Virus record (IMG/VR): IMGVR_UViG_3300011934_000017
Location: 62,001 to 126,000 of that record
DNA: 64,000 nt
Direction: 5' to 3' (one strand)
Shown: positions 9,356 through 32,849 of the stretch, piece after piece
Layout: every line of letters begins with the position of its first letter
Numbering within the stretch: the first letter of the stretch is position 1
The notes under the pieces: generated by a model
What the model was told of the DNA's origin: nothing
Databases searched by the model: none
Seen by the model: only the letters and a program-made list of their open reading frames with translations
Translations under genes and position numbers: made by a program

Positions 9356-9365
9356 TGAAACCTCC

Positions 9366-10720: not shown

Positions 10721-11527
10721 TTAATCTCCCAAAAGAATCCAATAAAAGTCCCAGCCCGAAGCCGTTACGTTTTGAGTACCGCCAGAACCGTCCGGCTCAA
10801 CATCAAGAAGATTGGTAACGACAGAAAGATTGGCTTTGCCTGTCTCTATAGACGTAACGCGCACTTTGTTCGCTACGTTGGAAGCAGGATTCACCCAAAA
10901 CAGAACTATAGAATGAGGATTAGACACGTCATTCAGCGCTTCAGGAAAAATAATCTCTTTAGTAAGTCCCGGAGTAGGATCAGTAAAACGTCCCCACTGT
11001 AATGAACGTCCAGAAGACACACTTTCCGAAGAAGCTGCATCAGTAGACACAAGAACAGGTGACTCACCATCATAACCTGAGGCACCTTCACCCCCAGCAG
11101 GCCCTTGCGGACCTGTTGCGCCTCTTTCACCTCTTTGCCCAGCGGGACCACGCGGGCCTGCGGGTCCCTGAGGACCCACATCACCTTTCGGACCAGCACA
11201 CCCTGGTACACCAGAACGACCATCGCGACCATTACGCCCACTGTTACCTGGAGCACCTCTAGGTCCTGTAGCGCCACGAGGACCCACACCAATATTGTGT
11301 ACTGTCATGAAGCCTGGGACTTGAACAATCGTTGAGTCGGCGCGATACAGATTTAGAACACCGATTTCCGGATCAAAATCGCCGCGCGTAACATAATTGT
11401 CCTCATCGCTACTATCTCCAGGTGTCTGTACTTCAATTTCACTTCCGTTGTAAACAACATCATCGTTTGGAGACGCATTGTTTCCAGGATCCAGCATGCC
11501 TAGCGGCACTCGTGTTAACTTACCCAT
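10721..11527 (-). CDS. Collagen-like fibre protein (paralog 6) with C-terminal QWG domain
   Basis: 25 contiguous Gly-X-Y triplets; shared N-domain GDFDPEIGVLNL...GF. Confidence 0.8.
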   Translation of the reverse strand: MGKLTRVPLGMLDPGNNASPNDDVVYNGSEIEVQTPGDSSDEDNYVTRGDFDPEIGVLNLYRADSTIVQVPGFMTVHNIGVGPRGATGPRGAPGNSGRNGRDGRSGVPGCAGPKGDVGPQGPAGPRGPAGQRGERGATGPQGPAGGEGASGYDGESPVLVSTDAASSESVSSGRSLQWGRFTDPTPGLTKEIIFPEALNDVSNPHSIVLFWVNPASNVANKVRVTSIETGKANLSVVTNLLDVEPDGSGGTQNVTASGWDFYWILLGD

Positions 11528-11537
11528 AATCTATCCT

Positions 11538-11714
11538 CTAGCGTACTGGAAGCCAAGATGTATTATCAGCGCTTCGTACTTTTGTATTTTCTGGAAACAT
11601 TTGAACCCACGAGCTATTGCCGTTTGTTCTTACTTTCCATCCCCAGTTAGAGAAATTTTGTACCCAGTTCGCGTCAGGATTTTCTCTAACACGTAATGTA
11701 ACAACAGTAGCCAT
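11538..11714 (-). CDS. 58-aa Trp-repeat protein missed by the ORF track
   Basis: Manual translation MATVVTLRVRENPDANWVQNFSNWGWKVRTNGNSSWVQMFPENTKVRSADNTSWLPVR*; AAGGAG RBS; fills the gap; resembles the N-terminus of 11726..15148. Confidence 0.75.
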   Translation of the reverse strand: MATVVTLRVRENPDANWVQNFSNWGWKVRTNGNSSWVQMFPENTKVRSADNTSWLPVR

Positions 11715-11725
11715 CTGTATACTCC

Positions 11726-14700
11726 TTAAGCAGGTCGAGTGACTTTTCTGTAGACGTAGAATCTATCATTTGTATTCGGATTTACGGCAACTCTCGGCCA
11801 GTTAAGCCAGTCGCTGAATGGACGTGTTGTTCCTTGATTTACCCAGCTTCCACTTTCTGCTATCCATGCTCTACCGCTGGATGCACTAAACACCCGCCCT
11901 GCTGTAAACGGCCAAACGACATTTTCGTAGGTAGATTCAGATTGACTGCGAGTGTAGAAACCAAAACGTTGGTCGCCTGAGAATCGAGTCGTTTCTGAAT
12001 AGTCATTTATATTGAAATTACGTGCAGTGAACGAACCTCCGTTAAACTTCTCAGTATCAACTGTAAACGCATCACCGTTTTTACGTACTCTTACTTTGGT
12101 TCTAGCGCCAGACCAACCGCCGGATACATCATCGCCTTCGCCACCCCAGCTCTCTAGCACAGTCACAGAGCTTCCTTCGAGATACAGAAGACCATAACCA
12201 GAAGAAGGTGCATTTCCTCCTTTGTTTCGTACAACAACAAGCTGATAAGGAACACCTCCTTGTACTTGAGCAGCTACCACCAAACCTATACTATCGTCAT
12301 CATTATTGCTAGAGGTTAAAACGGCCTCTAACTCATAATCAGCTACAGCATCAGGACTGATAATGCTGTTGGAGCTACCTGTATTTGTAGGCATTACAAA
12401 GCGATTGTTCGAAGTGTCGTAATACCAATCAGCAGCTTCACCTCCAGCAGAACTTGCCGAAGCATAGTAGTTATCACCATCTACACGCGGCCAAGTGTTA
12501 AACACGTCTTGTAGTGTAGGTGCAGGATTCGCAGCAATAAAGCTTTGGGCTTCTGTATCGGAGTTGAACATGTAAGCTTCAACTTCGGGCATAAAGACAG
12601 AATTTCCAGAACCCAGTGAAACAGTAGGTTCGAAATAAGCACCGCGCCAATCAGATGATGTGATACTGATAACTTCACCTGTATCAATATCGGTGATTTT
12701 CATAATCAGCCAGCTTGGAGTGTTGTGAGGAATGTTCTCACAAAGAACGTATAAGAAATGAACTCCTGGACTGATTGTTACATCTGTCGGCGTAAAATCA
12801 AGCATATCAAGGTCAGCGACGTGCAACCAAGGGCCACCATCTGGCATTACCATAACAGAAGCAAAATCGTCACACTCACCTTGTATACGAATATTACCGG
12901 ATTCTGTGTTGAACATACTTACAGCCATAAATGCTCTGTTACCTTGTACAATCGTATCGCTGGTCAAAGCTATTTGGTAACCATTAAAGCCGTTTGCGTC
13001 GGGTCCTGAAGTCTCTACCATTTTAGGCAGACCTTTAGAGAAGTTGGTAAAGCGTGTTCCTGAATTAGGATGTACAGTAGGACAGTGCGTTCTAAACTGC
13101 CACCAGCTTGCAGAATCATTTATGACTCTTACGTTTTGCAGCCCTGTAGTGGGAGTTATTAAAGCACCAGCACCAACAGCAGGCCAGCGATATACTTCAG
13201 CAACGGTGTCTTCTAAAACAGTACCATCACTTTCAATGCTGATTCTATTAGGTGCACCAGCCGGATACGCAACACTTGGAGCTATTGTGTAGTATTCTGT
13301 TAGAGAGAAGCTATCGTCAGGAGCTATTCCGTCAAATTCAATACGTGTAGCTGCCGCCGAAGTACCTTGATGCTCTTCACTGCAATCCCTTACGCCTTCT
13401 ACACAGTCCATTATATACGACCAATCTGAAACTTCACCTTCTGCTCCATCTACGCGCACTTCGATAAGATCACCAGAAGAAGGATCGTATTCGAACGTGA
13501 GAGAGCCGTTGCCTGACACAGAACCCGATGCTTGAAGTAAATCACCACCTTGAAATACTTGAACATTATCAGGAGAACTGAATGTGTTGAAGCGTATTTT
13601 ACCTTCACCTCCATCAGAACCAAGATCGTGATACATGATAGTAGAAGGTGCACCAACAGAATCTACGCGGCCAGCTTCATCCCCGCAAGTTTTAGGATCG
13701 CTTTCGCTACCACTGCCTATATACGGATCAGAACCACTACCGGATCCACCTCCGCTACTTCCGCCACTTCCACTTCCTCCATGCGGACACCACAAATGAT
13801 ATGTCCATGACTGCATGACTTCTGTAGAGGTGATACGTACAACGACGATAGTATCACCGTCAGCATTCGCAGGATCGTATGGAATTTCTAATAGCCCGTG
13901 ATGATAGCCGGATGCTGCGGTACCTGTTTCAGTAAATCCAGGAGAGGATGCAATTAAGCTGCCTCCATGAAACACTTCACACTTAGCAGCGACCCAAGGA
14001 AACAAATACAGAAGCTCAATCGTTCCAGGTGTAGGTCCCATATCGTGGAACATATCTTGAACCATCGTAGAGGTCGTAGTGACATACGGACCACCACTAT
14101 AAACGCCGCCACATGGATGTATTCTATCCCAAAAGTAGTCACCAGGACAGTAAAGCTTGTAGAGCCAAATAGAGTTCATTGAACCTTCTACTTCTACTCG
14201 AACTTTGCCGTCGCCTCCGTTTCTTCCAGGCCAGAAAAAGTATTCAACTTCACGAGGTGCGATTTCACCCGAGTCTCGTGCAGGAAGCTGAGTCGTAGTG
14301 TGTAACAGTTCGTCACCGTAATAGATTCTATAGCGTTGTGTACCTTCGGTAGACACCCAACGAATATGAACGTTACCTTCAACATCAGGCAAAGTATGAT
14401 AATAACTGCGTCTTTCGGTGTAAGTAGGGTCTTCCTCTAAATGCAAATGTTGATCTACTACAAGCTCGCTACAACCATAAGAATCAGAGTAGTTACCGGA
14501 GCCTGTGGGACTTGTAGAGCTTCCCCCGCCTGTAGTGCCCGGTGGATTTCCGGGACCACCCGATCCTACACTTCCTCCTGTACCGCCACTTCCCGATCCT
14601 CCTGTACCGCCACTTCCCGATCCTCCTGTACCGCCAGAACCTGATCCACCGCTGCCGCCTGTACCTGCACTGCCTCCGCTACCACTTCCACCACTTCCGC

Positions 14701-15148
14701 TTCCTGTGCCTCCATTGTAGTAGCCGTCGTTGTATCCAGAATTTCCAGGACCCCAAGGATATCCTCCAGATGCTCCGTTTCCTGGCCAAGGTGAGCCACC
14801 TCCAGCAGGGCCACCTGTTCCCCAATAACCAGAGTCCCCATCTTCTTCTGCCCAACCCGGCCACGGATCAGTCTCTCCTGGAATTGAGTCAGGTCCACCA
14901 AGATCAGGACCTGAGCCGTTTTCGCCTGTGCCGTCAGGTGTACCACCCATAGCGTCAGACCCACAAAGATCATCAGTAAGACAGTCAATGTTAATCCAAT
15001 AATTATTCGTACCGTGACGCGCTTTCATTCCATTGGAAGGTAACATGCGTCGCCATCCAGAATTTGCTGCATTCCTTACGTACCATTCTGACTGACAGAT
15101 ATCTAGCCAAAGTGAGTTTTCAGGATTTCTTATACGTAAACGACCCAT
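11726..15148 (-). CDS. Large adhesin-like fibre protein: Trp-repeat N-terminus, Gly/Ser linker, ~4 Cys-bounded beta repeats, lectin-like C-terminus
   Basis: 1140 aa; repeats of [YF]H.[LM]...G...VR[VI]...W.Y.[LM].C; C-terminal DDDSIG domain paralogous to 2739..3713. Confidence 0.7.
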   Translation of the reverse strand: MGRLRIRNPENSLWLDICQSEWYVRNAANSGWRRMLPSNGMKARHGTNNYWINIDCLTDDLCGSDAMGGTPDGTGENGSGPDLGGPDSIPGETDPWPGWAEEDGDSGYWGTGGPAGGGSPWPGNGASGGYPWGPGNSGYNDGYYNGGTGSGSGGSGSGGSAGTGGSGGSGSGGTGGSGSGGTGGSGSGGTGGSVGSGGPGNPPGTTGGGSSTSPTGSGNYSDSYGCSELVVDQHLHLEEDPTYTERRSYYHTLPDVEGNVHIRWVSTEGTQRYRIYYGDELLHTTTQLPARDSGEIAPREVEYFFWPGRNGGDGKVRVEVEGSMNSIWLYKLYCPGDYFWDRIHPCGGVYSGGPYVTTTSTMVQDMFHDMGPTPGTIELLYLFPWVAAKCEVFHGGSLIASSPGFTETGTAASGYHHGLLEIPYDPANADGDTIVVVRITSTEVMQSWTYHLWCPHGGSGSGGSSGGGSGSGSDPYIGSGSESDPKTCGDEAGRVDSVGAPSTIMYHDLGSDGGEGKIRFNTFSSPDNVQVFQGGDLLQASGSVSGNGSLTFEYDPSSGDLIEVRVDGAEGEVSDWSYIMDCVEGVRDCSEEHQGTSAAATRIEFDGIAPDDSFSLTEYYTIAPSVAYPAGAPNRISIESDGTVLEDTVAEVYRWPAVGAGALITPTTGLQNVRVINDSASWWQFRTHCPTVHPNSGTRFTNFSKGLPKMVETSGPDANGFNGYQIALTSDTIVQGNRAFMAVSMFNTESGNIRIQGECDDFASVMVMPDGGPWLHVADLDMLDFTPTDVTISPGVHFLYVLCENIPHNTPSWLIMKITDIDTGEVISITSSDWRGAYFEPTVSLGSGNSVFMPEVEAYMFNSDTEAQSFIAANPAPTLQDVFNTWPRVDGDNYYASASSAGGEAADWYYDTSNNRFVMPTNTGSSNSIISPDAVADYELEAVLTSSNNDDDSIGLVVAAQVQGGVPYQLVVVRNKGGNAPSSGYGLLYLEGSSVTVLESWGGEGDDVSGGWSGARTKVRVRKNGDAFTVDTEKFNGGSFTARNFNINDYSETTRFSGDQRFGFYTRSQSESTYENVVWPFTAGRVFSASSGRAWIAESGSWVNQGTTRPFSDWLNWPRVAVNPNTNDRFYVYRKVTRPA
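14573..14636. repeat. 24-bp tandem repeat (~2.7 copies) encoding a GSGSGGTG linker
   Basis: Unit TCCTCCTGTACCGCCACTTCCCGA read directly from the sequence. Confidence 0.85.
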
Positions 15149-15174
15149 GACACCTCCTAATAGGCATTAATAAA

Positions 15175-15678
15175 TCAAGGACGAATCCAAAGAGCGCCCG
15201 CACCTACAGCACCGGGATCAGCAGACTGAATGTAGATATCTACTTTACCGTCTTCACCTTTAGGGCCTGTAGCACCGGTCGCACCCATAGGCCCCATCTC
15301 GCCTTGAGCACCCATCTCACCTTGCGGACCAGTAGCACCCGGAGTTCCAGGAGGTCCTTCACAGCCCGGAGGCCCTTGTAAGCCGTCTTCACCTAGCAGT
15401 CCGTCAGTCCCGTCAACGCCACCTATACCTTGAGCGCCTGCAGGGCCGACACCTATATCACCCTGAGTCATGAAGCCGCGAATCTCTATACTCTGACCAT
15501 TCACTAACGTCAGCTTTAGAGTGCCTGTAACGTCGTTAAAGCTGCCACCAATAACGCCTGTGTTATTGATATCTTCATCTTCTTGGGTGCCGACTTCTTT
15601 ACCGTCGTATCGAACGTCAGAATTAGGACGACCACGAGCTTCAAGCATCGAAAGCGGTGTTCTAGTTAAGCCTCCCAT
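15175..15678 (-). CDS. Short collagen-like fibre protein (paralog 5)
   Basis: 23 Gly-X-Y triplets; ends QSADPGAVGAGALWIRP. Confidence 0.8.
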   Translation of the reverse strand: MGGLTRTPLSMLEARGRPNSDVRYDGKEVGTQEDEDINNTGVIGGSFNDVTGTLKLTLVNGQSIEIRGFMTQGDIGVGPAGAQGIGGVDGTDGLLGEDGLQGPPGCEGPPGTPGATGPQGEMGAQGEMGPMGATGATGPKGEDGKVDIYIQSADPGAVGAGALWIRP

Positions 15679-15851
15679 TACACATCCTCCAGTTTTCTTC
15701 GCATACGCTGTTGCTGTTCTTTTAAAACCTTTTCAATATCGGAAGAGGTCAACTTTGATTTTTTACACGACAAACAAGCACCAAACAATTCAACGCTTAT
15801 TGCTTGAGAAGAGTCGTAAGGCCATATTGCTTTGCATTTTGGACATTTCAT
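15678..15851 (-). CDS. 57-aa CxxC...CxxC zinc-finger protein missed by the ORF track
   Basis: Manual translation MKCPKCKAIWPYDSSQAISVELFGACLSCKKSKLTSSDIEKVLKEQQQRMRRKLEDV*; TAATG stop/start overlap with the next gene. Confidence 0.7.
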   Translation of the reverse strand: MKCPKCKAIWPYDSSQAISVELFGACLSCKKSKLTSSDIEKVLKEQQQRMRRKLEDV

Positions 15852-15863
15852 GTTTTGTTCTCT

Positions 15864-16526
15864 CTAAGGCCAAGGTGTTCCACCGCTTGAGCTGGAAGAA
15901 TACATAGAAGGAGGATTAGCATTGGGATTTATCCATAAGCCACCTCCGCCGATAGAGCCGGGGTCTGAAGTAGATACGACAATGTTTATTGTACCGTCTT
16001 CACCTGGCGGTCCTGGTGGCCCCATATTTCCAGGTTCACCTTGAGGACCAGTAGGGCCAATAGGTCCAATCTCACCAGTAGGACCCATTCTTCCTACAGG
16101 GCCTTTAGCGCCTTTTGTGCCTCGAACTCCGGGAGGGCCTTGCATACCTCTACGTCCTGATCTTCCCTTAGGTCCTTGAGGTCCACGCTCACCTTGAGGT
16201 CCTGCACATCCTTGTTCTCCGGGCAGACCATTTTTTCCGGGTTTACCCGGCTTACCATCTTTTCCTCGCGGTCCTTCGGGGCCAGTAGGTCCTTTTGGGA
16301 TAGTGTCTGCTCTGTGAAAGCCAGAAATGCGAATCCTTTCGCCGTTCTTCATGTGTAAAATTAGACTACCTGTAACAGCATCTAGGTGCCCGTAATCAAT
16401 CTCTGAAATAAGCGCTTCTTTAGGTTGATCAAAATTCAATCTTTCTTGCTGCGCCACTATATCTGTATCAGGTTCTTGTTTTCGAGCACTGATCTGATTT
16501 AATATTGGCTTTGTTAGTCCTGCCAT
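15864..16526 (-). CDS. Collagen-like fibre protein (paralog 4), strongly basic helix
   Basis: ~34 Gly-X-Y triplets; STSDPGSIGGGGLWI motif. Confidence 0.8.
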   Translation of the reverse strand: MAGLTKPILNQISARKQEPDTDIVAQQERLNFDQPKEALISEIDYGHLDAVTGSLILHMKNGERIRISGFHRADTIPKGPTGPEGPRGKDGKPGKPGKNGLPGEQGCAGPQGERGPQGPKGRSGRRGMQGPPGVRGTKGAKGPVGRMGPTGEIGPIGPTGPQGEPGNMGPPGPPGEDGTINIVVSTSDPGSIGGGGLWINPNANPPSMYSSSSSGGTPWP

Positions 16527-16555
16527 ATCAAGTCTCCTTGTTTAAACATACGTAT

Positions 16556-19300
16556 CTATTTTACCAACGTTAGTGTTGCAGGAGTAGTTGATGAACCACC
16601 GTCTATAAATAAAGTATTATTCCATTTCCAGCGAGGATCGCTCATATCAAGTAGCATCTCCGCATATCCTGAAGAGTCAGCGGTAACGCTTTGATAGAGT
16701 GCACCTGCCGGAACATCGAAGTGCAGTTTCATGGTCAAAGTGGCACCTGAACTCCAAATTCTTATTTTTGTGAGGGGGTCAGTACAGCATCCTATCGGTA
16801 TTGTGTAAATCATTCCGTTCGTGCTAGAATCGTATTGCGCAGTTGACCACATACTATGCATCATATCCGAACCTGCAATGATGAATCCATTACAGTTGAA
16901 TGCAATGCCAGATGCTGGACTACCGCTACTTGGATCCGCACAGTGCTCCGGCGGTGGTTCTGGAGGAGGTGGCGGCGGTGGTTCTGGAGGAGGTGGCGGC
17001 GGTGGTTCTGGAGGAGGTGGCGGACTCAATGAGGTATCTTCAATGGAAATATCCGAACTCGTAGCCAACGCGCTAGTACCAGAACACTCATGTAACTTGA
17101 CCTTAAATTTCTCCGTACCTTCGGTTAAGGCATCGTTACGAATACCTATGATAAAACTGCCACTATCTCCAGAAACACTAACACTTCCATTCATGCTATT
17201 TGTAAAGTCATTAGAGTTTATGCTGCCTGATACTGACATTATTGTCCAACAAAGCGTGCCAGAACCGTAATTAGTTGTAGTCACGGACATAATAACTGAC
17301 CCACCTTCACTAACGCTTGTAATGTGCGGCACAATACTGAAGGTAGGCGGAGGCGGAGGTGGAGGTGGAGGTGCCGGGGTTAAAGATGTATCGTTAATAG
17401 AAATAGCCGAGGTTGTGGCGAGAGCACTGGTATTAGAGCACTCGTGCAACTTAACCTTAAACTTTTCTGTACCTTCTGTTAGACTGTCACTTTTAATACC
17501 GATGCCGAATGAAGCGCTGTCGTTAGAAACGTAAATGCTTCCACTCATGGAACTTGTAAAATCGTCAGAGTTTAAGCTACCGCTTACAGGAAGAATCGTC
17601 CAACATAATGTTCCTGATCCAAAGTCAGTAGTATCGACGGACATAATAACTGACCCACCTTCATTCACACTGGTGATGTTAGGTGTTATGGAGTACGTAG
17701 CAGGAGTAGTCGAGGTATCTACAATGGAAATGTCTGAACTCATTGCCAAAGTAGCTGTGCTTCCAGAGCATTCGTGTAGCTTGACTTTGAACTTCTCTAA
17801 CCCTTCTGTTAGGCTGTCCTCTCTTATTCCTATGTTAAAACTTCCACTGTCGTTAGATACGCTGACACTTCCACTCATAGAACCGGTGAAATCATTAGAG
17901 TCTACACTGCCACTAACTGGCATTAGCGTCCAGCATAAAGTGCCCGATCCATAATGCGCGGTAGTCACTGTCATTGTGACTGTGCCGCCTTCATTTATGC
18001 TGGTAGTATTCGGCGCTATAGCATACGTAGGAGGTGTTAACGAGGTGTCGCCAATAGTTACTTCGGAACTCATAGCTAAAGAGGCTGTGCTTCCTGAGCA
18101 CTGGTGAAGTTTCACTTTAAACTTCTCGGTACCTTCAGTGGAATTGTCTTCTCTTATTCCTATGTCAAAAGAGCCGCTGTCATTAGAAATGAACACGCTG
18201 CCACTTATAGGTCCTGTAAAGTCGTCGGAGTTTATGTCACCGTCGGCCGGAAGTATTGTCCAGCACAAAGTACCTGTACCGTAATCAGTGGTATCAACGG
18301 TCATTGTGACAGACTGACCTTCATTCACGTTGTTAACGTTTGGTGTTATTGAGTATGTAGGAGGACTGCGAGAGGTGTCATTTATAGTGATCGCAGCACT
18401 GGTGTCCAAAACAGACCCACTATTCGAACAAGGGTGCAATCGAACTTTAAATTTTTCCGTTCCTTCCGTAAACGTATCCTCACGCACAGCTATATCGAAG
18501 CTACCACTGTTGTCTATAATAGACACGCTGCCTGTCATAGCTGAGTTGAAGTCGTCTTCATCTATATCACCCGAATCTGGCACAATAGTCCAACACAATG
18601 TACCTGAGCCAAACATTGTAGTGGTAACTGTCATAGTCACTATATTGCCTTCATCTACGTTCGTAGAATCGGGTTCAATGCTGTAACTAGGTGGAGTAGG
18701 GTCAACCCACAACACTCCGGGACCTACTGCTCCAGGGTCTGTAGCAGAGACTACAATACTAGGCAGCACTTCTTCGCCTTGTTCTCCGGGAACTCCTACG
18801 CCGCCATCTACACCTCGCGGACCTGTAGGGCCGATTGGCCCTATGTCACCTTCAGATCCCGCAGCTCCTCTTGGTCCTTGAGGTCCTGTAGCACCTCTAA
18901 TTCCGGCAGGACCTCGCATACCTTTTCTTCCATCAAGTCCTGTCTTTCCTCTTGCACCTGTGTCGCCTCGTGTTCCTTCACATCCAGGTTCTCCTACAAG
19001 ACCATCTCTTCCCGGAACGCCTTGCTTACCTGGTGCACCATCATCTCCTTTAGGGCCTGTAAGTCCCATAGGAATTTCATCTTCTACGGGAAAGCCTTCA
19101 ACTTCAATGCGCTCTCCGTTATACAGTTGGAGAACGAGCGACCCTTTCAGTTCATCATAAAAGCCGTACTCAACTTCAGAAACAGTGGATTCTCTAGGAA
19201 TATCTAAAGAGAGTTTTTCATCGCTAACAATGATTTCTGTTTCTTTTTCTGAACCCTTTGCTTTTACTTGTTCTATAACAGGTCTGGTTAATCCTGTCAT
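16556..19300 (-). CDS. Collagen-like fibre (paralog 3) with 5 Calx-beta/Ig-like repeats, poly-Pro and a Cys-rich tip (start adjusted to MTGLTRP at 19300)
   Basis: 33 Gly-X-Y triplets; five ~110-aa repeats [YF]xIxP..T.V.EG...LCWT...D..TEG.EKFKV.LH.CS; AGGAGA RBS before 19300. Confidence 0.8.
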   Translation of the reverse strand: MTGLTRPVIEQVKAKGSEKETEIIVSDEKLSLDIPRESTVSEVEYGFYDELKGSLVLQLYNGERIEVEGFPVEDEIPMGLTGPKGDDGAPGKQGVPGRDGLVGEPGCEGTRGDTGARGKTGLDGRKGMRGPAGIRGATGPQGPRGAAGSEGDIGPIGPTGPRGVDGGVGVPGEQGEEVLPSIVVSATDPGAVGPGVLWVDPTPPSYSIEPDSTNVDEGNIVTMTVTTTMFGSGTLCWTIVPDSGDIDEDDFNSAMTGSVSIIDNSGSFDIAVREDTFTEGTEKFKVRLHPCSNSGSVLDTSAAITINDTSRSPPTYSITPNVNNVNEGQSVTMTVDTTDYGTGTLCWTILPADGDINSDDFTGPISGSVFISNDSGSFDIGIREDNSTEGTEKFKVKLHQCSGSTASLAMSSEVTIGDTSLTPPTYAIAPNTTSINEGGTVTMTVTTAHYGSGTLCWTLMPVSGSVDSNDFTGSMSGSVSVSNDSGSFNIGIREDSLTEGLEKFKVKLHECSGSTATLAMSSDISIVDTSTTPATYSITPNITSVNEGGSVIMSVDTTDFGSGTLCWTILPVSGSLNSDDFTSSMSGSIYVSNDSASFGIGIKSDSLTEGTEKFKVKLHECSNTSALATTSAISINDTSLTPAPPPPPPPPPTFSIVPHITSVSEGGSVIMSVTTTNYGSGTLCWTIMSVSGSINSNDFTNSMNGSVSVSGDSGSFIIGIRNDALTEGTEKFKVKLHECSGTSALATSSDISIEDTSLSPPPPPEPPPPPPPEPPPPPPPEPPPEHCADPSSGSPASGIAFNCNGFIIAGSDMMHSMWSTAQYDSSTNGMIYTIPIGCCTDPLTKIRIWSSGATLTMKLHFDVPAGALYQSVTADSSGYAEMLLDMSDPRWKWNNTLFIDGGSSTTPATLTLVK
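16950..17021. repeat. 24-bp tandem repeat x3 encoding PPPPPEPP
   Basis: Unit GGCGGTGGTTCTGGAGGAGGTGGC. Confidence 0.85.
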
Positions 19301-19330
19301 ATCGTATCTCCTTAACAAGCATAGAAGCGC

Positions 19331-21127
19331 CTATTTCACTAGCGTCAATGTAGCAGGTGTAGTTGATGAACCTCCATCAATAAACAAAGTATTATTCCAT
19401 TTCCACCCTGGGTTACTCATATCTATAGGCATTTCTAAAAAGCCAGTAGAAGGATCCGCAGTCATACTCATATAAAGAGAACCCGGAGGAACATCAAAGT
19501 ATATTTTCAACGTTAATGTCGCACCTGAACTCCAAAGACGGATAGCCGTAAGAGGATCGTCGCAACACCCGATAGGTATTGTGTAGATCATTCCGTTCGT
19601 GCTAGAGTCGTACTGTGCTGTTGACCACATAGAGTGTTGCATATCCGAACCTGCAATGATGAATCCATTACAGTTGAATGCTATACCTGAGGCTGGACTA
19701 CCACTACTCGGATCCAAACAATGCGCCGGAGGAGGCGGTGGAGGTGGTGGACTCGGAGGTGGTGGTTCTGGTGCCGGAGGAGGTGGTGGTTCTGGTGCCG
19801 GAGGAGGTGGTGGAGGTGGTGGTGGAGGTGGTGGAGGTGGAGGTGGTGGTGGTGGCGCGGGACTCAAAGACGTGTCGCCAATCGTTATAACAGAACTCAT
19901 AGCGAGCGTCGCACTGCTTCCTGTACACCTGTGAAGCTTAACTTTAAATTTCTCCGTTCCTTCTGTACTACTGTCGTTACGAATACCTATGTTAAAACTG
20001 CCGCTATCGTTAGATATATCCACACTTCCACTCATAGACCCTGTGAAGTCGTTAGAGCTTATTGAGCCTGCTACGGAAAGAATCGTCCAACAAAGGGTAC
20101 CCGATCCATAATCTGTCGTGTTTACAGTCATGGTAACGGAAGAACCTTCATTCACACTTGTACTACTTGGAGAAATCGAATAAGTAGCAGGACTTCGGGA
20201 GGTATCATTGATCGTTATTGCTGAGCTTGTAGCTAAAACAGAACCACTATCAGAACAAGGATGCAGTCGCACTTTAAATCTTTCAGTGCCTTCTGTTAAG
20301 CTATCATCCCGAATAGGTATATTAAAAGAACCGCTATTATCTGTTATCGATACACTACCTGTCATAGATGAATTAAAATCGTCTTCGTTTATAGTGCCAG
20401 AGTCTTGCACAATAGTCCAACACAACGATCCTGATCCGAACATCGTTGTAGTGACCGTCATCGCGACAGACGATCCTTCATCCACGTTAGTAGAGTCTGG
20501 TTCAATATCATAGCTAGGAGGTGTAGGATCGACCCACAGAACTCCAGGACCAACAGCACCAGGATCGGTAGCAGAGACTACAATACTGGGAGACGCTTCT
20601 TCACCGGTCTCACCCGCAGGGCCCATTTCACCATCTTCGCCTCTAGGTCCTGTTGGCCCAATCGGTCCTATATCACCCTTCGGGCCTGTAATGCCTCGGG
20701 GCCCTTGAATGCCTGTTCTGCCTCGGATTCCAGGTTCTCCTTCTACACCTTCTCTTCCGTCAGGTCCAATTTCTCCTTGCGAGCCTGTATCACCTCGCAT
20801 TCCTTCACAGCCCGGCTCACCTGTTAAACCGTCTCTACCTAGTAGACCGGGTTGTCCGTCTTTTCCATCACCTCCTTTAGGGCCTGTGACACCTGCAGGT
20901 ACTTTAGAAGCCGTAGGAAAACCCTTTACCTCAATACGCTCTCCATTATATAGCTGTAGAACAAGTGCGCCTTTTAACGGGTCAAAGAATCCGTACTCAA
21001 CTTCAGAAACAGTAGACTCTCTAGGAATATCTAAAGATAGCTTGTCTTCTTGTACGACAATCTCCGTCTCTTTTTCCGACCCTTTCGCATGTACTTGTTC
21101 TATAACAGGTCTGGTTAATCCTGCCAT
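19331..21127 (-). CDS. Collagen-like fibre (paralog 2) with 2 Calx-beta/Ig-like repeats, long poly-Pro and a Cys-rich tip; near duplicate of 16556..19300
   Basis: 33 Gly-X-Y triplets; same N- and C-terminal domains as paralog 3; start set to MAGLTRP by homology. Confidence 0.8.
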   Translation of the reverse strand: MAGLTRPVIEQVHAKGSEKETEIVVQEDKLSLDIPRESTVSEVEYGFFDPLKGALVLQLYNGERIEVKGFPTASKVPAGVTGPKGGDGKDGQPGLLGRDGLTGEPGCEGMRGDTGSQGEIGPDGREGVEGEPGIRGRTGIQGPRGITGPKGDIGPIGPTGPRGEDGEMGPAGETGEEASPSIVVSATDPGAVGPGVLWVDPTPPSYDIEPDSTNVDEGSSVAMTVTTTMFGSGSLCWTIVQDSGTINEDDFNSSMTGSVSITDNSGSFNIPIRDDSLTEGTERFKVRLHPCSDSGSVLATSSAITINDTSRSPATYSISPSSTSVNEGSSVTMTVNTTDYGSGTLCWTILSVAGSISSNDFTGSMSGSVDISNDSGSFNIGIRNDSSTEGTEKFKVKLHRCTGSSATLAMSSVITIGDTSLSPAPPPPPPPPPPPPPPPPPPPAPEPPPPPAPEPPPPSPPPPPPPPAHCLDPSSGSPASGIAFNCNGFIIAGSDMQHSMWSTAQYDSSTNGMIYTIPIGCCDDPLTAIRLWSSGATLTLKIYFDVPPGSLYMSMTADPSTGFLEMPIDMSNPGWKWNNTLFIDGGSSTTPATLTLVK

Positions 21128-21148
21128 ATTAAACTCCACAAAGTCTGT

Positions 21149-21907
21149 TCAAACTTGTTCTGGCTTACCCCAGATTACTGCATTTCCTCCGGGATTAGAT
21201 TCAGATATGATTACGGTAGATTCTATTGTTGCGCCAGCAGGACCGGCAGGACCGTCTTCGCCTCCAATACACTCAGGTCCAGGCTGACCTCGAGCACCTT
21301 CATGCCCGTATCTTCCTTTTTCACCTACAGGGCCTTGAATACCCACATCACCTTCTGGTCCCATAGGTCCTTTACGTCCTTGTATACCGTCTTCGCCAGG
21401 ATCACCCTGCTCGCCAGGAAGTCCAAGCGGACCAGGAGGTCCTTCACAACCTACTGCACCGTCTGGACCATCGTCGCCGGTGTCACCATCGTCGCCGTCG
21501 TTACCTCTTTCACCTCTAGGTCCTGTAGGGCCTCTGCCGAAGTCACTCTGTATCAGAAAGTCTTTTATTTGAACTACTTCGCCATTTCTTCGGACAAGAT
21601 TAAGCGTACCATCTTTAGACTCGAATGCGGCTTCTACAAGCAATCCGTCGTTTTTTACTTCCCGTGTATTAAAATCAACGGTATCGGTATTGACGTTACG
21701 CTTTGCGGCTTTTGATTCTCTATCGTCCCCAAAAACATCAAACTGTTCCATGTGCAACGATGTTAAAGGGGAACCAGAAGAGTGAGGAAGCAGCTTTTTA
21801 TCTACCTGAGAAGCCGTATTAGTCAGAATGTTCTTTCCTACTGGAACACTATGATCATTCCCTTCATATAGGTTAGATAGCAGCTTACTTTCTTTAATGC
21901 CTTTCAT
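21149..21907 (-). CDS. Collagen-like fibre protein (paralog 1), acidic helix
   Basis: 29 triplets, a CIG interruption, then 4 more; ends SESNPGGNAVIWGKP. Confidence 0.8.
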   Translation of the reverse strand: MKGIKESKLLSNLYEGNDHSVPVGKNILTNTASQVDKKLLPHSSGSPLTSLHMEQFDVFGDDRESKAAKRNVNTDTVDFNTREVKNDGLLVEAAFESKDGTLNLVRRNGEVVQIKDFLIQSDFGRGPTGPRGERGNDGDDGDTGDDGPDGAVGCEGPPGPLGLPGEQGDPGEDGIQGRKGPMGPEGDVGIQGPVGEKGRYGHEGARGQPGPECIGGEDGPAGPAGATIESTVIISESNPGGNAVIWGKPEQV

Positions 21908-22476
21908 GATACCCTCCGTATCCTTTGTACGGCCTTTTGAGCAATATCTGAAATTTCGTTTGAAGTCTTAGCGGAGCCTAATAGATCAAAAGTACGCTTC
22001 ATATCAAGGCTTAGCGTGTTGTGTTTTTCCACCAACAGAGCGAGAACCTTCTTAACATCGGACGGAATGAGAAGAATAGGACCTTCTGAACTCTTAACAA
22101 AGAAGTCTTTATCTAGCGCAACTGCGGCTACCATGAGAGTAATGTCTTTATCTTCTACAAATACAGTTAGGTTTTTACGGTTATCCAGTAAAACTTCTTT
22201 TTTAGACTCGTCGCAAAGCTTTTGGAGCTTCTCTTTTGTCTCACGTAAGAATCTATTAGGATTCGGACCTTCGCACACCAAATCGCCGTGAACATATCGA
22301 TACAAAAGTCCATCTTCTAGTCCACTAATGATCTGCACGTAAATAAATTCTGAAACAACTACTTCAAAATCACTTAGAGGCACAGATGAAGTTGCGGTGT
22401 GTTCATTGGCTCCTGAAACAATACCGTTCGAGTCGATCTGTAGTGTATAAACAATGCTCTTATCGGAAGTATCCAA
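21904..22476 (-). CDS. Hypothetical, possibly tail-fibre assembly protein
   Basis: 190 aa, directly after a tail-fibre gene; helical C-terminus. Confidence 0.4.
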   Translation of the reverse strand: MDTSDKSIVYTLQIDSNGIVSGANEHTATSSVPLSDFEVVVSEFIYVQIISGLEDGLLYRYVHGDLVCEGPNPNRFLRETKEKLQKLCDESKKEVLLDNRKNLTVFVEDKDITLMVAAVALDKDFFVKSSEGPILLIPSDVKKVLALLVEKHNTLSLDMKRTFDLLGSAKTSNEISDIAQKAVQRIRRVS

Positions 22477-22488: not shown

Positions 22489-24807
22489 CTATCGAATCAA
22501 AGGAGTACCAATGATATTGAAATTCATACCAAGCTTCGAGCCGTACTTGGAAATACTGGCATGACGAACTCGCATACGTGCAACAACATCAATATAACCT
22601 GCTGGAATGTTGTCTTTGAGTACATCAAACACCTGAGTCAAGGAAGCATTGCTAAAAGCACGTTCATTGTTGCTGCCGCTCAGACTGCTAAAGCCTGCTT
22701 CGCCTGTGCCTTTGATATCACGTCCGTATTCAGGTTCTTTGCTTGACGTAGTTCGGAAGCCGATTACGTATTGCATTACTTCAATACCTTCAGGACTGAT
22801 AAAGCCGGGACCCAACATCGAAGAAAAGTCTACGGATACCTGAAGCATAACATCGCTTGTTAGGTTCACGCGGTACGTATAGATAATCTCTTCGGAATCA
22901 TCTTGGCGACGCAATGTGCTAAACTTAAAGCTGGTGTTTTCGTTAAACCGTTGAGCGAACGTACTTTCTACTTTGTATGAAGGATGCTGGCCTGTGATTC
23001 GTATTCCATTGCCTGCTGTTAGATCAATACCTGGAATGGGAAGAACAACAGGATGATCGTCATGACGCAAAAGCTTCAGCGACCGTGATGTGAGAACAGC
23101 ATCGGTCACAACACCTCGCAGATTAGTTTGCGGTGTACCCTCACTTTTAACATTGTGAAAAACAACAGCTTCAATCTCAAGACCACCGGATGCGGGAGCA
23201 CTTAAAATTATTTTGTTGTCCACCACAGAGTACAGATTGCGGTGAATATGGGTACCACTAACAGAAACAAACGTCTGATCTTTAGTCTGTGGTTCTACAG
23301 GAAGCTCAATGAAAAGCGTATCGCCTACTGTAATGTTAGTCGTGCTCAGAACAGTTGTACTATAGCCTTCTTCTCTTCGACCTGCAATAGAGGATATCTC
23401 AATGTCAAGACCTTCATTAGGCGGACTTACAAAGACAATCTCCTGAGTAGCAGAATCGTATGTGTAAGCGGTCGTTGACTGAAGAAGTCCTCGAACGTAG
23501 ACAAAGGCATACTCGGAGCTTTCTACAGGCTGAGAAAGACCAAAGCGCCGTTGCATTCCATCGCCTGTATAAGCGTCTGTCATTATCTCAGTGAACGAAC
23601 CACTTCCTGGCTCTTTTGTGATAAGACGAAAATCAATCGAAGCATGAGGAGGAATGCTGTCTGCAAACTCTAGTTCTGAACCTGCGATATCATACGCTGA
23701 TTTATGCTGTGTAACACCCCCAACTGCCGTTATACAATGGTTAACGTCTTTAAGCACAACAGAACCAAGAGGATAGCGGCGCGTTTGGCCGGTACCGGCA
23801 TCATTCATAGCAGATATGCGAAGCTTGCCCGGAGACGTGAACAACGTGTTAGTAGCGCCTCCACCTTTTGCTGGCGGCGCCCAAACAGGCATGCTGCCAA
23901 CCCCGCGTGTCAATACCCAATCACGAGGAACGTTAGCCATAGAAGGTGGATATTCTGAACTACAGTTACCACCTCCTTCAAGTCTGCGCCAGACTGAAAC
24001 AGTATCACCAGGAGCAAGCCCTGTTACAGGCTTACCGTCTTTTTCGTGAAAGCATTCGGTGCCATTATCATAGTAAAACTTTCGAACAGCGCCGCGAGCA
24101 GCGCCTGTCATAACGAAGATAATTACCACTTCGCCATTACGAAAGCGAACAGCATCGGTCAAAGCTTTAACACAAACTTTGGTAGACGATACGCTTCCTG
24201 GTTCTCCTGAATAAACACGATCAAAGCCGGGAAACGCCCATTGTAAACCACCAGCACCAAAACGAACAGCAAAGCCGGGAGACTGTGTGCCGTCTGAATT
24301 GTCGAATAAGTTGTTAACGACAATCACATTGAAGTCGCCTTCTTCGGGTAGAGGAAGACGATCAACAGAAGGCGTAGCAGGCATACTACAGGAATCACCG
24401 ATGCTTACATTGATAACGCTCGGATCAATTCTTGACGTAACGAGGATCGCATGAATACGAGAACCTCTACCTTCGTGCAGATAGTAGGGGTCTGCAAACA
24501 CACAACGACCAAACATCACGCCGTTGTCCATAAACAAGCCCACTTCTTTCATGTACAGACCAGCATCAGGAACTACATGGTCAGGTACTTCGAACGTGAA
24601 CTTAACGGCATGCGTGTCGAGCACTTCAACCAGATGAATATTTCCTTGGTACAATGTACTTCCAATTATATCATCATCTGTGTCTTTTGTTGCAATGTTA
24701 GAATCACCGATCTTGAAAGAAACAATATTTACCAAAAAGCCGCCAGCTTCAGCATTATTAGCAGCTTGAAGGCCAAGATCGGTGATATGAATTACATTAT
24801 CAGCCAT
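22489..24807 (-). CDS. Baseplate-attached tail fibre (tail-collar/DUF3751-like N-terminus)
   Basis: ITDLGLQAA...FKIGD...MKEVGLF..G.MF N-terminal baseplate-anchor motif; repeated G.G..RR[YF].L modules. Confidence 0.7.
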   Translation of the reverse strand: MADNVIHITDLGLQAANNAEAGGFLVNIVSFKIGDSNIATKDTDDDIIGSTLYQGNIHLVEVLDTHAVKFTFEVPDHVVPDAGLYMKEVGLFMDNGVMFGRCVFADPYYLHEGRGSRIHAILVTSRIDPSVINVSIGDSCSMPATPSVDRLPLPEEGDFNVIVVNNLFDNSDGTQSPGFAVRFGAGGLQWAFPGFDRVYSGEPGSVSSTKVCVKALTDAVRFRNGEVVIIFVMTGAARGAVRKFYYDNGTECFHEKDGKPVTGLAPGDTVSVWRRLEGGGNCSSEYPPSMANVPRDWVLTRGVGSMPVWAPPAKGGGATNTLFTSPGKLRISAMNDAGTGQTRRYPLGSVVLKDVNHCITAVGGVTQHKSAYDIAGSELEFADSIPPHASIDFRLITKEPGSGSFTEIMTDAYTGDGMQRRFGLSQPVESSEYAFVYVRGLLQSTTAYTYDSATQEIVFVSPPNEGLDIEISSIAGRREEGYSTTVLSTTNITVGDTLFIELPVEPQTKDQTFVSVSGTHIHRNLYSVVDNKIILSAPASGGLEIEAVVFHNVKSEGTPQTNLRGVVTDAVLTSRSLKLLRHDDHPVVLPIPGIDLTAGNGIRITGQHPSYKVESTFAQRFNENTSFKFSTLRRQDDSEEIIYTYRVNLTSDVMLQVSVDFSSMLGPGFISPEGIEVMQYVIGFRTTSSKEPEYGRDIKGTGEAGFSSLSGSNNERAFSNASLTQVFDVLKDNIPAGYIDVVARMRVRHASISKYGSKLGMNFNIIGTPLIR

Positions 24808-32458: not shown

Positions 32459-32847
32459 TAACTAAATCCTCGCGCTAGGTTAAATTGAAAAGTGAATTGG
32501 CGAGCTTCAAGCTCTGGCGCCCTGTATCGAATGTTCACAAAATACTGACTGTTTTGCGGATCAGGAATAACGATGATTTGATCAAAGACAATTCGAAACT
32601 CACCATTGTCTTCTAAGGCACGTTCCATATCGTATTGAATGCGACTCGCTGTAACGTCGTCAATAGGTTCAAAAAGGTGCTTGCCTACATCGCTTCCTAA
32701 ACGCGGTCGAAACCACTTTGATCGCTTCGGTGTCTCGAAGATACAGGCAATATTTTGGTTAAGGCTGTGCTCATTCTTAACCAGTTCGTTCTGCGTTACA
32801 CCTGCATACAGGTTAACGTCTGAATATAAAACATCAATGATAGCCAT
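32458..32847 (-). CDS. Baseplate wedge gp25/GpW-like (start adjusted to MAIIDV at 32847)
   Basis: T.K.S.WFRP.LGS....LFEPID motif; the longer ORF extension overlaps the PAAR-like gene. Confidence 0.85.
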   Translation of the reverse strand: MAIIDVLYSDVNLYAGVTQNELVKNEHSLNQNIACIFETPKRSKWFRPRLGSDVGKHLFEPIDDVTASRIQYDMERALEDNGEFRIVFDQIIVIPDPQNSQYFVNIRYRAPELEARQFTFQFNLARGFS

Positions 32848-32849
32848 AA

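What the first reader, a model, noticed from the sequence alone, without database searches (positions are those of the whole stretch)
10721..21907. Six collagen paralogs with Cys fixed in the 10th Gly-X-Y triplet and contrasting charges: candidate hetero-oligomeric collagen appendage
Seen: 10721, 15175, 15864, 16556, 19331 and 21149 share an N-domain ([FL]D...G.L.L...NG..I.[IV].GF-like). Their uninterrupted collagen runs have 25, 23, ~34, 33, 33 and 29(+4) triplets. In all six the G-C-[EA] triplet is exactly the 10th, despite divergence elsewhere. Five then carry an S..[DN]PG....[LI]W motif. 15864 and 10721 helices are K/R-rich, while 21149 (GND GDD GDT GDD GPD) and 15175 are D/E-rich. Established: cysteine knots and K-D/E pairs set chain register and heterotrimer choice in animal collagens such as C1q, whereas described prokaryotic collagens are mostly homotrimers. 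Inference: these chains form registered heterotrimers or disulfide-linked bundles displaying interchangeable tips.
Basis: partly seen in the sequence, partly recalled or inferred. Interest (0 to 1): 0.75.

Follow-up and report, generated by a model that had tools for sequence, protein, structure and literature searches.

The report
Cysteine-marked collagen fibre family, jumbo phage
A 220-kb uncultivated jumbo phage encodes six related collagen-stalk fibre proteins, each with one cysteine exactly ten Gly-X-Y triplets from a shared anchor domain; this layout is conserved across the whole PaBG/Lu11/Y3 phage clade, and two of the chain types swap charge in step through evolution, which suggests the fibres are tied together side by side.

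Summary
All six minus-strand ORFs have the shared N-domain, uninterrupted runs of 25/23/34/33/33/29(+4) triplets, and a single Cys in the X position of triplet 10.

The window is the baseplate/fibre module of a jumbo myovirus related to Pseudomonas phages PaBG and Lu11 and to the Erwinia/Dickeya "hairy" phages. That clade carries four ancient paralog types with fixed triplet counts: F 29+, C 34, B 23, A 24/25. Cys-10 is kept in 160 of 165 distinct sequences of these types. D and E are lineage-specific duplicates of the C type.

New findings:
- The charge of triplets 1-9 of the F and C types evolves in a compensatory way (phylogenetic-contrast r about -0.6; 9 contrasts opposite, 1 same).
- A second Cys at triplet 20 occurs in F exactly when it occurs in C.
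- F always has Cys in place of the Gly of triplet 30, which makes its stalk as long as C's.
- A carries an R-pyocin/gp53-type trimeric knob.

Best reading: these are homotrimeric fibres that share one anchor and are held in axial register, probably laterally bundled like a C1q stem, by complementary charges and surface cysteines. True heterotrimers are not excluded. Redox state and virion location are untested.

The parts
21149..21907 (-). F-type chain, 252 aa. It has a 47-aa N-extension, the N-domain, 29 triplets (DNA about 21272-21532), Cys213 in the Gly position of triplet 30, 4 more triplets, a beta-cap and no distal domain. The proximal stalk is very acidic (GND GDD GDT GDD GPD).
21446..21448 (-). 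Cys154 codon (TGT) of F: X position of triplet 10
21269..21271 (-). Cys213 codon of F. It replaces the Gly of triplet 30 and is invariant in 47/47 distinct F-type sequences.
19331..21139 (-). E chain, 602 aa (likely start 21127). N-domain, 33 triplets (20597-20893), cap, 2 Calx-beta/Ig-like 110-aa units, a poly-Pro linker and a 130-aa C-terminal domain. Cys111 codon at 20807-20809.
16556..19318 (-). D chain, 920 aa (likely start 19300). Same plan as E but with 5 Calx-beta/Ig-like units. The C-terminal domain is 85% identical to E's. Collagen run at 18770-19066; Cys113 codon at 18980-18982.
15864..16526 (-). C-type chain, 220 aa. N-domain, 34 triplets (15987-16292), cap and a short tail, with no distal domain. 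The proximal stalk is basic (GKD GKP GKP GKN). Cys107 codon at 16206-16208.
15175..15678 (-). B-type chain, 167 aa. N-domain, 23 triplets (15241-15447) and cap only. Acidic. Cys106 codon at 15361-15363.
11726..15148 (-). 1140-aa Cys-rich fibre-like protein encoded inside the collagen cluster (orthologue of PaBG gp248). Cys18, Cys56 and Cys62 are conserved. It is a candidate partner or hub, not shown to be one.
11538..11714 (-). 58-aa ORF resembling the N-terminus of the 1140-aa protein (positional counterpart of PaBG gp249)
10721..11527 (-). A-type chain, 268 aa. N-domain, 25 triplets (11060-11284) and a C-terminal knob (residues 157-268) with the R-pyocin fibre foot / AP22 gp53 fold. Cys110 codon at 11198-11200.
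21904..22476 (-). 190-aa ORF between the main fibre gene and F (position of PaBG gp244). No family match.
22489..24807 (-). 772-aa tail-collar-type fibre protein. It is the conserved syntenic marker of the clade (47% identical to PaBG gp243).
25083..33006 (-). Upstream baseplate genes: a 1968-aa tail protein, a gp6-like wedge protein (489 aa) and a gp25-like wedge protein (182 aa). They place the collagen cluster in the baseplate/fibre module.

Best explanation
Shown:
- The six genes belong to one family of collagen-stalk fibre proteins in the baseplate/fibre module of a PaBG/Lu11/Y3-like jumbo myovirus.
- Each chain has a family-specific 78-aa beta N-domain, then a gap-free proximal stalk of nine triplets followed by a G-C-x triplet, then a distal stalk of type-specific length, then a short beta cap.
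- After the cap comes either nothing (B, C, F), a pyocin/gp53-type knob (A), or Ig-like spacers plus a C-terminal domain (D, E).
- Four types (F, C, B, A) are ancient and keep their triplet numbers across genera. D and E are recent duplicates of C.

Inferred:
- Each type forms its own homotrimer.
- The shared N-domains dock on neighbouring, equivalent sites of the baseplate, so that the proximal stalks run parallel and in register for about 8.6 nm.
- There they pack laterally (F with C, possibly B with A) through complementary charges.
- They are tied by disulfides between the outward-facing X-position cysteines at triplet 10, and at triplet 20 in some lineages. These would form after release into an oxidising medium.
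- Beyond the tie the stalks are free.
This would be a C1q-stem-like bouquet or braced fibre. In this window F has kept the acids and C the bases of an ancestral G[RK]D repeat.
For: Family and context:
- Pfam Collagen and PHROG tail-fibre profiles that include the N-domain match.
- There is synteny with the PaBG gp243-gp250 'putative tail fiber' genes.
- Baseplate wedge genes lie upstream.

Conservation:
- Triplet numbers 29/34/23/24-25 and Cys-10 hold in 8 named phages, about 57 cluster representatives and 64 IMG/VR loci.
- The distance from the G[FL] motif to the first Gly is 10 residues in 156 of 167 distinct members.
- N-domains cluster by type, and D/E nest in the window-clade C type.

Hetero-association:
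- For the charge of triplets 1-9, F versus C gives phylogenetic-contrast r = -0.59 to -0.63. None of 5000 permutations reached this, and 9 contrasts were opposite against 1 the same.
- It is the strongest of 24 comparisons. The distal stalk is weaker (-0.32), and the pairs F-A, C-B and C-A are about 0.
- The charge is reversed in NCTB/L042 relative to the window.
- Cys-20 is present in both F and C in 14 loci, in neither in 43, and never discordant. There are three concordant changes on the tree.

Homotrimer default:
- The A knob matches homotrimeric R1/R2 pyocin fibres and AP22 gp53 (probability 1.0, E 7e-4 to 2e-2; Atlas TM 0.6).
- F has Cys in the Gly position of triplet 30 in 47/47 sequences.

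Length and precedent:
- With triplet 30 counted, F's stalk is 33-34 units, equal to C's 34.
- In the C1q stem bundle, inter-helix disulfides form by proximity (PMC11869133).
Against: - No experiment or multimer model was available. Oligomeric state, redox state of the Cys and presence in virions are all untested.
- The PaBG gel-band proteome lists none of these proteins (PMC7412058, Table 1).
- Phages assemble in a reducing cytoplasm, and this genome encodes no Erv1/Alr oxidase.
- The Cys-20 co-occurrence rests on only three independent events, so a sign test cannot reach significance.
- The charge anticorrelation is driven by a handful of large contrasts.
- In Lu11-like phages both stalks are near neutral.
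- A crude charge-pair count ranks the F and C homotrimers of this window among the worst of 216 chain combinations. That would favour mixed helices over homotrimers.
- JA/Salmondvirus-like phages lost Cys-10 in F only, so the tie is dispensable there.
Confidence: 0.4

Rival explanations
1. True heterotrimers. F-type and C-type chains, and perhaps B with A, co-fold into one mixed triple helix. Its register and composition are set by complementary X-position bases and Y-position acids, as in designed ABC collagen peptides. Cys-10 then links neighbouring heterotrimers.
For: - F and C stalks are equal in length, 33-34 versus 34 triplet units.
- Proximal charge evolves in a compensatory way, with reciprocal loss of acids in one chain and bases in the other.
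- The F and C homotrimers of this window score very poorly for charge pairs: FFF has 19 repulsive contacts and ranks 214 of 216, CCC ranks 185 of 216.
- In most genomes the F, C and B genes are adjacent.
Against: - The invariant core Cys at triplet 30 of F has no counterpart in C, and it needs at least two F chains in one helix.
- F usually carries a 250-560-aa distal part and C none, so a mixed helix would give a lopsided tip.
- The A knob belongs to a homotrimeric fold, while B has 23 and A 24-49 triplets.
- N-domains of F and C are only about 28% identical.
- No heterotrimeric phage fibre is known to me.
- The charge-pair score is my own crude implementation.
Confidence: 0.15
2. Independent homotrimeric fibres with no fibre-fibre contact. 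The constant N-domain plus ten-triplet segment, including the Cys and the G[RK]D triplets, is a docking site for one common partner. That partner could be a baseplate protein or the Cys-rich 1140-aa protein encoded in the cluster, or an assembly factor, in the way MASP/C1r-C1s sites lie at a fixed place on collectin/C1q stalks. The charge changes would track the partner or be chance.
For: - All paralogs share the same module at a fixed spacing.
- G[RK]D at triplets 6-7 is conserved in all types.
- The 1140-aa protein inside the cluster keeps Cys18/56/62 in 14-15 of 14-17 orthologues.
- Homotrimer indicators are as above.
Against: - It does not explain why F and C charges change in opposite directions (9 of 10 contrasts).
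- It does not explain why Cys-20 appears or disappears in F and C together.
- The main 772-aa fibre has no conserved Cys.
Confidence: 0.3
3. The cysteine is not a cross-link at all. It stays reduced and serves another role, for example a folding or nucleation checkpoint, metal binding between fibres, or a redox or host-surface contact. The fibres would be the loose 'hairs' seen on relatives' tails.
For: - Assembly takes place in a reducing cytoplasm, and there is no viral sulfhydryl oxidase.
- Relatives Lu11, Y3, JA and AD1 are 'hairy Myoviridae', and the proteins that form their hairs are unknown (PMC6143709).
- B, C and F are bare stalks without tips.
Against: - Near-absolute conservation of a solvent-exposed Cys is hard to explain without a bonding or binding role, as is the paired appearance of Cys-20 in two paralogs.
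- The gene position is baseplate, not sheath.
Confidence: 0.1

Closest known systems
Collagen-like tail-fibre proteins of Pseudomonas phages PaBG (gp245, 246, 247, 250) and Lu11, and of Erwinia/Dickeya/Yersinia jumbo phages (Y3, AD1, JA11/13, pEa_SNUABM, fHe-Yen9-02), annotated 'putative tail fiber protein'
   Same: They are direct orthologues. They share the N-domain, the gene order after the tail-collar fibre gene, the triplet numbers per type and Cys in triplet 10.
   Different: The window phage has two extra C-derived long chains (D, E). Its F chain has lost the distal domain, and its F/C proximal charges are far more polarised. None of the papers read mentions collagen repeats or the Cys (PMC7412058 and PMC6143709: 0 hits for 'collagen').
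C1q and collectin 'bouquets' (animal defence collagens), in particular the C1q collagen stem bundle
   Same: Paralogous collagen chains are encoded by clustered genes. An N-terminal stem of roughly 9-10 nm has several triple helices packed in register. Inter-helix disulfides form by proximity, and the arms are free beyond the stem (PMC11869133). Partner-binding sites sit at fixed stalk positions (own knowledge).
   Different: There is no sequence or fold homology outside Gly-X-Y. There is no gC1q or lectin head. The Cys lies inside the helix (X of triplet 10), not in an N-terminal non-collagen peptide. The chains are probably homotrimers rather than ABC heterotrimers. Bundling here is inferred, not seen.
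R-type pyocin fibres (PA0620, PALES_06171) and Acinetobacter phage AP22 gp53
   Same: The C-terminal knob of chain A has the same fold (Foldseek probability 1.0, E 7e-4 to 2e-2). The role as a distal receptor-binding tip of a contractile-tail fibre is the same.
   Different: Sequence identity is 13-20%. The shaft is a collagen triple helix rather than a beta-helical/coiled shaft, and the N-terminal attachment domain is different.
Other prokaryotic and viral collagen-like proteins (streptococcal Scl1/2, Bacillus BclA, PRD1/PR772 P5 spike, staphylococcal phage 80alpha upper fibre gp68)
   Same: They have hydroxyproline-free Gly-X-Y stalks rich in charged residues, flanked by trimerising non-collagen domains (own knowledge; 6v8i gp68 hit; PMC6750898, PMC7048315).
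   Different: As far as I know, those are single-gene homotrimers without a conserved in-helix Cys and without a paralog set that keeps a common register.
Designed charge-pair collagen heterotrimers (Lys/Asp ABC peptides)
   Same: One chain is enriched in bases and another in acids at matching triplets.
   Different: Here bases sit in X and acids in Y, the reverse of the optimal design. Co-folding is not demonstrated.

Membership tests
Collagen triple-helix repeat proteins (Pfam PF01391) | Long uninterrupted Gly-X-Y repeat that passes the curated profile threshold | tested here: met
   Runs of 23-34 triplets. All six score 50-64 bits against a cut-off of 27.2.
PaBG/Lu11/Y3-clade collagen fibre family (PHROG 8745 / 38766) | The 78-aa N-domain followed directly by the collagen run | tested here: met
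   PHROG matches cover the N-domain plus helix, E 1e-22 to 1e-33. An N-domain HMM finds 212 members in relatives.
PaBG/Lu11/Y3-clade collagen fibre family (PHROG 8745 / 38766) | Position downstream of the tail-collar-type fibre gene in the baseplate module | tested here: met
   The order matches PaBG, Lu11, NCTB, HRDY3, AD1, JA13, Yen9-02 and SNUABM3 and 64 IMG/VR loci.
PaBG/Lu11/Y3-clade collagen fibre family (PHROG 8745 / 38766) | Cys in the X position of triplet 10 | tested here: met
   6/6 in the window. In relatives: C 47/47, B 40/40, A 27/27, D/E 3/3, F 43/48.
PaBG/Lu11/Y3-clade collagen fibre family (PHROG 8745 / 38766) | Actual component of the virion (tail fibre) | not testable with these tools
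   Only annotations exist. The PaBG gel-band MS lists none of them (PMC7412058, Table 1).
C1q/collectin-type defence collagens | Homologous globular head (gC1q or C-type lectin) | tested here: not met
   There are no such Pfam hits. The head of A is a pyocin/gp53 knob.
C1q/collectin-type defence collagens | Three paralogous chains of equal collagen length forming ABC heterotrimers | tested here: inconclusive
   F and C are equal in length, whereas B and A are shorter. Chain composition of a helix cannot be determined here.
C1q/collectin-type defence collagens | Inter-chain or inter-helix disulfides tying an N-terminal stem bundle | not testable with these tools
   Conserved Cys-10 and co-occurring Cys-20 are compatible with this. 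Redox state is unknown.
Charge-coded heterotrimeric collagen | Complementary charges between different chains at matching triplets | tested here: met
   In the window F is -6 and C is +2 over triplets 1-9, and NCTB/L042 are reversed. Phylogenetic-contrast r is about -0.6.
Charge-coded heterotrimeric collagen | Different chains demonstrably in one triple helix | not testable with these tools
   No multimer prediction or experiment was available. Indirect evidence (core Cys at triplet 30 of F, trimeric knob of A) argues against it.
R-pyocin / gp53-like fibre knob (PF21882), chain A only | C-terminal knob fold | tested here: met
   Model pLDDT is above 90 over residues 160-268. Matches: 6ct8, 6cxb, 6cl5, 6cl6 and 4mtm, probability 1.0. 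Atlas Gp53-like_C clusters give TM 0.57-0.62. There is no sequence-level Pfam hit.
'Hairy Myoviridae' tail hairs | These proteins form the whisker-like hairs seen on relatives' tails | not testable with these tools
   Relatives Lu11, Y3, JA and AD1 are described as hairy and the hair proteins as unknown (PMC6143709). No micrograph exists for this uncultivated phage.

The most novel reading that the evidence does not exclude
Different collagen paralogs of a virus physically co-assemble in axial register. F with C (and perhaps B with A) would do so either as covalently tied bundles of homotrimers or as genuine heterotrimers. Pairing would be specified by complementary charges in the first nine triplets and fixed by cysteines at triplets 10 and 20. 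That would be an independently evolved, C1q-stem-like hetero-collagen assembly outside animals, and possibly the molecular basis of the unexplained appendages of 'hairy' jumbo phages.
Probability: 0.4. Interest if true: 0.8.

Novelty: new variant of a known kind. Interest (0 to 1): 0.62.

Why it matters
Collagen-like phage fibres are known, but they are treated as simple homotrimeric spacers. This clade keeps four or more paralogous stalks for a very long time. They have exact lengths, a common anchor, a surface cysteine at one fixed height and co-evolving charges. That is the signature of a multi-fibre machine with built-in register.

If confirmed, it would have three consequences:
- It would give a bacterial-virus model for how collagen triple helices recognise and pack against each other, which is an open problem even for C1q (PMC11869133).
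- It would provide hydroxyproline-free, genetically encoded rules for hetero-association that are useful for collagen design.
- It would name candidate proteins for the uncharacterised appendages of PaBG/Lu11/Y3-type jumbo phages, several of which are studied for plant-disease biocontrol.

Tried and rejected
- Megablast of the region against GenBank phages found nothing.
- The search for related loci with the single 772-aa protein found nothing. An alignment was needed.
- A word-indexed homologue search of the N-domain gave only 3 proteins.
- A profile search of PDB sequences returned only the Gly-X-Y part.
- Fold searches of the N-domain model found no solved relative (best E 0.44). They found only its own family among viral models.
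- Atlas search of the D/E C-terminal domain gave only weak beta-sandwich/CBM-like leads, so its function is left open.
- A seventh 'collagen' hit elsewhere in the genome is a reverse-frame artefact of a Pro/Lys-rich gene.
- Module shuffling as the cause of the F/C charge swap is rejected, because N-domains cluster cleanly by type.
- Gene conversion as the cause of the shared Cys-20 is rejected, because the flanking triplets differ between F and C.
- An intra-helix cystine knot at triplet 10 is rejected on geometry. This is my own reasoning and was not computed from coordinates.
- Viral sulfhydryl oxidase and glutaredoxin were not found. One thioredoxin was found, which is uninformative.
- The Y3 'hairy Myoviridae' paper is not held in the library.

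Full report
**What is in the sequence**

The six minus-strand ORFs are referred to by letter:

| Letter | Coordinates | Length |
|---|---|---|
| A | 10721-11527 | 268 aa |
| B | 15175-15678 | 167 aa |
| C | 15864-16526 | 220 aa |
| D | 16556-19318 | 920 aa |
| E | 19331-21139 | 602 aa |
| F | 21149-21907 | 252 aa |

- All six pass the Pfam Collagen model.
- A script found uninterrupted Gly-X-Y runs of 25, 23, 34, 33, 33 and 29 (+4) triplets.
- In every case the only Cys of the run is in triplet 10, always in the X position. The codon is TGT in all six.
- The roughly 78-aa N-domains align without gaps up to the first collagen Gly.
- Net helix charges are C +6, A +3, D -1, B -7, E -8, F -11.
- Five of the six carry a variant of the S..[DN]PG..LW cap after the helix. 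A lacks it.

**Where it comes from**

- The window lies in a 220,237-bp IMG/VR virus record with direct terminal repeats. That genome holds exactly these six family members. A seventh weak hit is a reverse-frame artefact.
- The neighbouring 772-aa protein is 47% identical to the 'tail-collar fiber protein' gp243 of Pseudomonas phage PaBG. It is 30-38% identical to proteins of Lu11, HRDY3, phage NCTB and the Erwinia/Dickeya/Yersinia jumbo phages.
- Upstream lie gp25-like and gp6-like baseplate wedge genes and a 1968-aa tail protein.
- PaBG has the same gene order: gp243, gp244, then four collagen genes (gp245, 246, 247, 250) around a 1217-aa protein.
- Several of these relatives (Lu11, Y3, the JA phages, AD1) are described as 'hairy Myoviridae'. 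The proteins that form their hairs are unknown, and the annotated tail-fibre proteins are named as candidates (PMC6143709).
- Neither that paper nor the PaBG paper mentions collagen. The PaBG gel-band proteome does not list these proteins (PMC7412058, Table 1).

**Conservation**

I scanned three sets:
- eight named relatives;
- the 50%-identity cluster representatives found with an N-domain profile in 1.84 billion proteins;
- 64 IMG/VR loci found with an alignment of the 772-aa protein.

The clade has four orthologous types with fixed helix lengths:

| Type | Triplets |
|---|---|
| F | 29 |
| C | 34 |
| B | 23 |
| A | 24/25 (44-49 in Lu11-like phages) |

- N-domains cluster by type. D and E nest beside the C type of the window and its closest relative L016, which has one such copy. 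So D and E are lineage-specific duplicates of C.
- On distinct sequences, Cys-10 is present in C 47/47, B 40/40, A 27/27, D/E 3/3 and F 43/48. The exceptions are the JA/Salmondvirus-like F chains.
- In Lu11 an interruption shifts the count, but the Cys is still the tenth unit.
- The distance from the G[FL] motif of the N-domain to the first Gly is 10 residues in 156 of 167 members.
- The Cys is the only invariant non-Gly residue of the helices.

**New observations bearing on mechanism**

1. Ancestral charge pattern and its split.
   - All types share an ancestral G[KR]D G[KR]D GRD GRD pattern at triplets 4-8, with the base in X and the acid in Y.
   - In this window F has lost the bases (GND GDD GDT GDD GPD) and C has lost the acids (GKD GKP GKP GKN).
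   - In NCTB and L042 it is the other way round.

2. Compensatory charge evolution across 55 loci.
   - The net charge of triplets 1-9 of F and of C is anticorrelated after phylogenetic independent contrasts.
   - r is -0.59 to -0.63, no permutation of 5000 reached it, and among contrasts that change both by at least one unit, 9 are opposite and 1 is the same.
   - This is the strongest of 24 comparisons.
   - The distal stalk gives -0.32, B versus A gives -0.46 (p 0.009), and F-A, C-B and C-A are near zero.

3. A paired second cysteine.
   - A second Cys at triplet 20 is present in both F and C in 14 loci, in neither in 43, and is never discordant.
   - This corresponds to three concordant changes on the tree. 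That is too few for a significant sign test.
   - The flanking triplets differ, so this is not gene conversion.

4. An invariant core cysteine in F.
   - In all 47 distinct F sequences the Gly of triplet 30 is replaced by Cys.
   - Counted this way, F's stalk has 33-34 triplet units, the same as C's 34.
   - A Cys in the core position can bond only to the same residue of another F chain in the same helix. This is my own knowledge, by analogy with Gly-to-Cys substitutions in type I collagen.

5. The A tip.
   - The AlphaFold model of A has a confident C-terminal domain (pLDDT above 90, residues about 160-268).
   - It matches the foot of R1/R2 pyocin fibres and AP22 gp53 (probability 1.0, E 7e-4 to 2e-2). 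Atlas Gp53-like_C clusters give TM about 0.6.
   - These are homotrimeric receptor-binding tips.

6. The N-domain.
   - It is a five-stranded beta domain (pLDDT 70-87).
   - It has no solved relative and matches only its own family among viral models.

7. D and E.
   - They differ in having five versus two 110-aa Calx-beta/Ig-like units.
   - They share a 130-aa C-terminal domain (85% identical) behind a poly-Pro linker.
   - B, C and F have no distal domain.

**Interpretation**

- X-position side chains of the same triplet in the three chains of one helix are related by about 103-108 degrees and 2.9 A. They point outward, roughly 8 A apart. This is my own estimate from standard helix parameters and was not computed from coordinates.
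- They therefore cannot form a knot within one helix. A Cys kept at one fixed height in every paralog is best read as a contact between helices or with a common partner.
- The F-C charge compensation and the paired Cys-20 add to this. I favour homotrimeric fibres whose shared N-domains dock side by side, with proximal stalks packing in register for about 8.6 nm and tied by disulfides that form after release.
- The closest known analogue is the C1q stem bundle, in which inter-helix disulfides form by proximity (PMC11869133).
- Confidence is 0.4, because nothing about oligomeric state, redox state or virion location could be tested.

The rivals are:
- True F/C heterotrimers (0.15). These are favoured by equal length and by my crude charge-pair count, in which the F and C homotrimers of this window rank 214th and 185th of 216 combinations. 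They are disfavoured by the core Cys of F, the unequal tips and the trimeric knob of A.
- A common docking partner without fibre-fibre contact (0.3). The Cys-rich 1140-aa protein inside the cluster keeps Cys18/56/62.
- A non-bonding role of the thiol on loose 'hairs' (0.1).

**Comparison and novelty**

- The genes are orthologues of annotated but uncharacterised 'tail fiber' genes of PaBG-like phages. The kind, a phage collagen-like fibre, is known.
- Four things appear undescribed:
  - the multi-paralog architecture with exact stalk lengths;
  - the invariant in-helix Cys;
  - the core Cys of F;
  - the compensatory charge evolution.
- I rate this a new variant of a known kind, interest 0.62.
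Heterotypic association has real comparative support, but as bundles rather than cysteine-knotted heterotrimers. 'Interchangeable tips' applies only to A versus D/E.

Noticed in passing
window 16949-17023 and 19725-19855: The poly-Pro/Glu linkers of D and E are encoded by 24-nt tandem repeats. The D array is 3.1 copies at 100% identity, which suggests recent expansion and a linker of variable length.
   Followed up: partly
window 11538-11714 (-) and 11726-15148 (-): A 58-aa ORF repeats the Trp-rich N-terminal motif of the adjacent 1140-aa protein, as with PaBG gp249/gp248. The 1140-aa protein has a roughly 150-aa Gly/Ser-rich low-complexity stretch and several Cys conserved across the clade.
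   Followed up: partly
window 9366-10238 (-) and 5057-6763 (-): The 290-aa ORF best matches a PHROG labelled 'HNH endonuclease'. However, it lies among fibre genes and shares a roughly 65-aa C-terminal module (phrog_21918/16122) with the 568-aa 'virion structural protein'. The nuclease label looks like a mis-annotation that has been propagated into relatives' records.
   Followed up: no
window 8456-9493 (-) vs 9366-10238 (-): The longest ORF, starting at a TTG, overlaps the upstream gene by 128 nt. The real start is probably further downstream.
   Followed up: no
L010 (phage NCTB) 12017-19276; L029 10001-13228: In NCTB three genes of this fibre cluster are annotated as containing intein domains. 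In IMG/VR locus L029 the 772-aa fibre match spans about 900 nt more than elsewhere, and its F-type ORF has no collagen run next to the N-domain. These may be inteins or insertions in fibre genes.
   Followed up: no
L013, L051, L052, L054, L057, L058, L073 (JA/Salmondvirus-like phages), F-type gene: This is the only lineage that lost Cys-10 (GNT instead), and it lost it in the F chain alone. It keeps the core Cys of triplet 30. Here F is strongly basic and B, not C, is the acidic partner.
   Followed up: partly
Lu11-like loci (L011, L033-L036, L043, L068), end of F helix: A cluster of three Cys (GLC GFS C...GPC) sits at triplets 28-32 of the F chain. It resembles the C-terminal cystine knots of animal collagens.
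   Followed up: no
own genome G000:C1:198608-198901 (outside the window): A thioredoxin-family gene is present. No Erv1/Alr oxidase or glutaredoxin was found.
   Followed up: no
own genome G000:C1:185398-185637 (L008): An apparent seventh collagen-like hit is the reverse frame of a gene encoding a Pro/Lys-rich (PKxP repeat) 542-aa protein.
   Followed up: yes
window 30989-32458 (-): The gp6-like baseplate wedge protein has one Cys (residue 342) that is invariant in 27/27 relatives.
   Followed up: no
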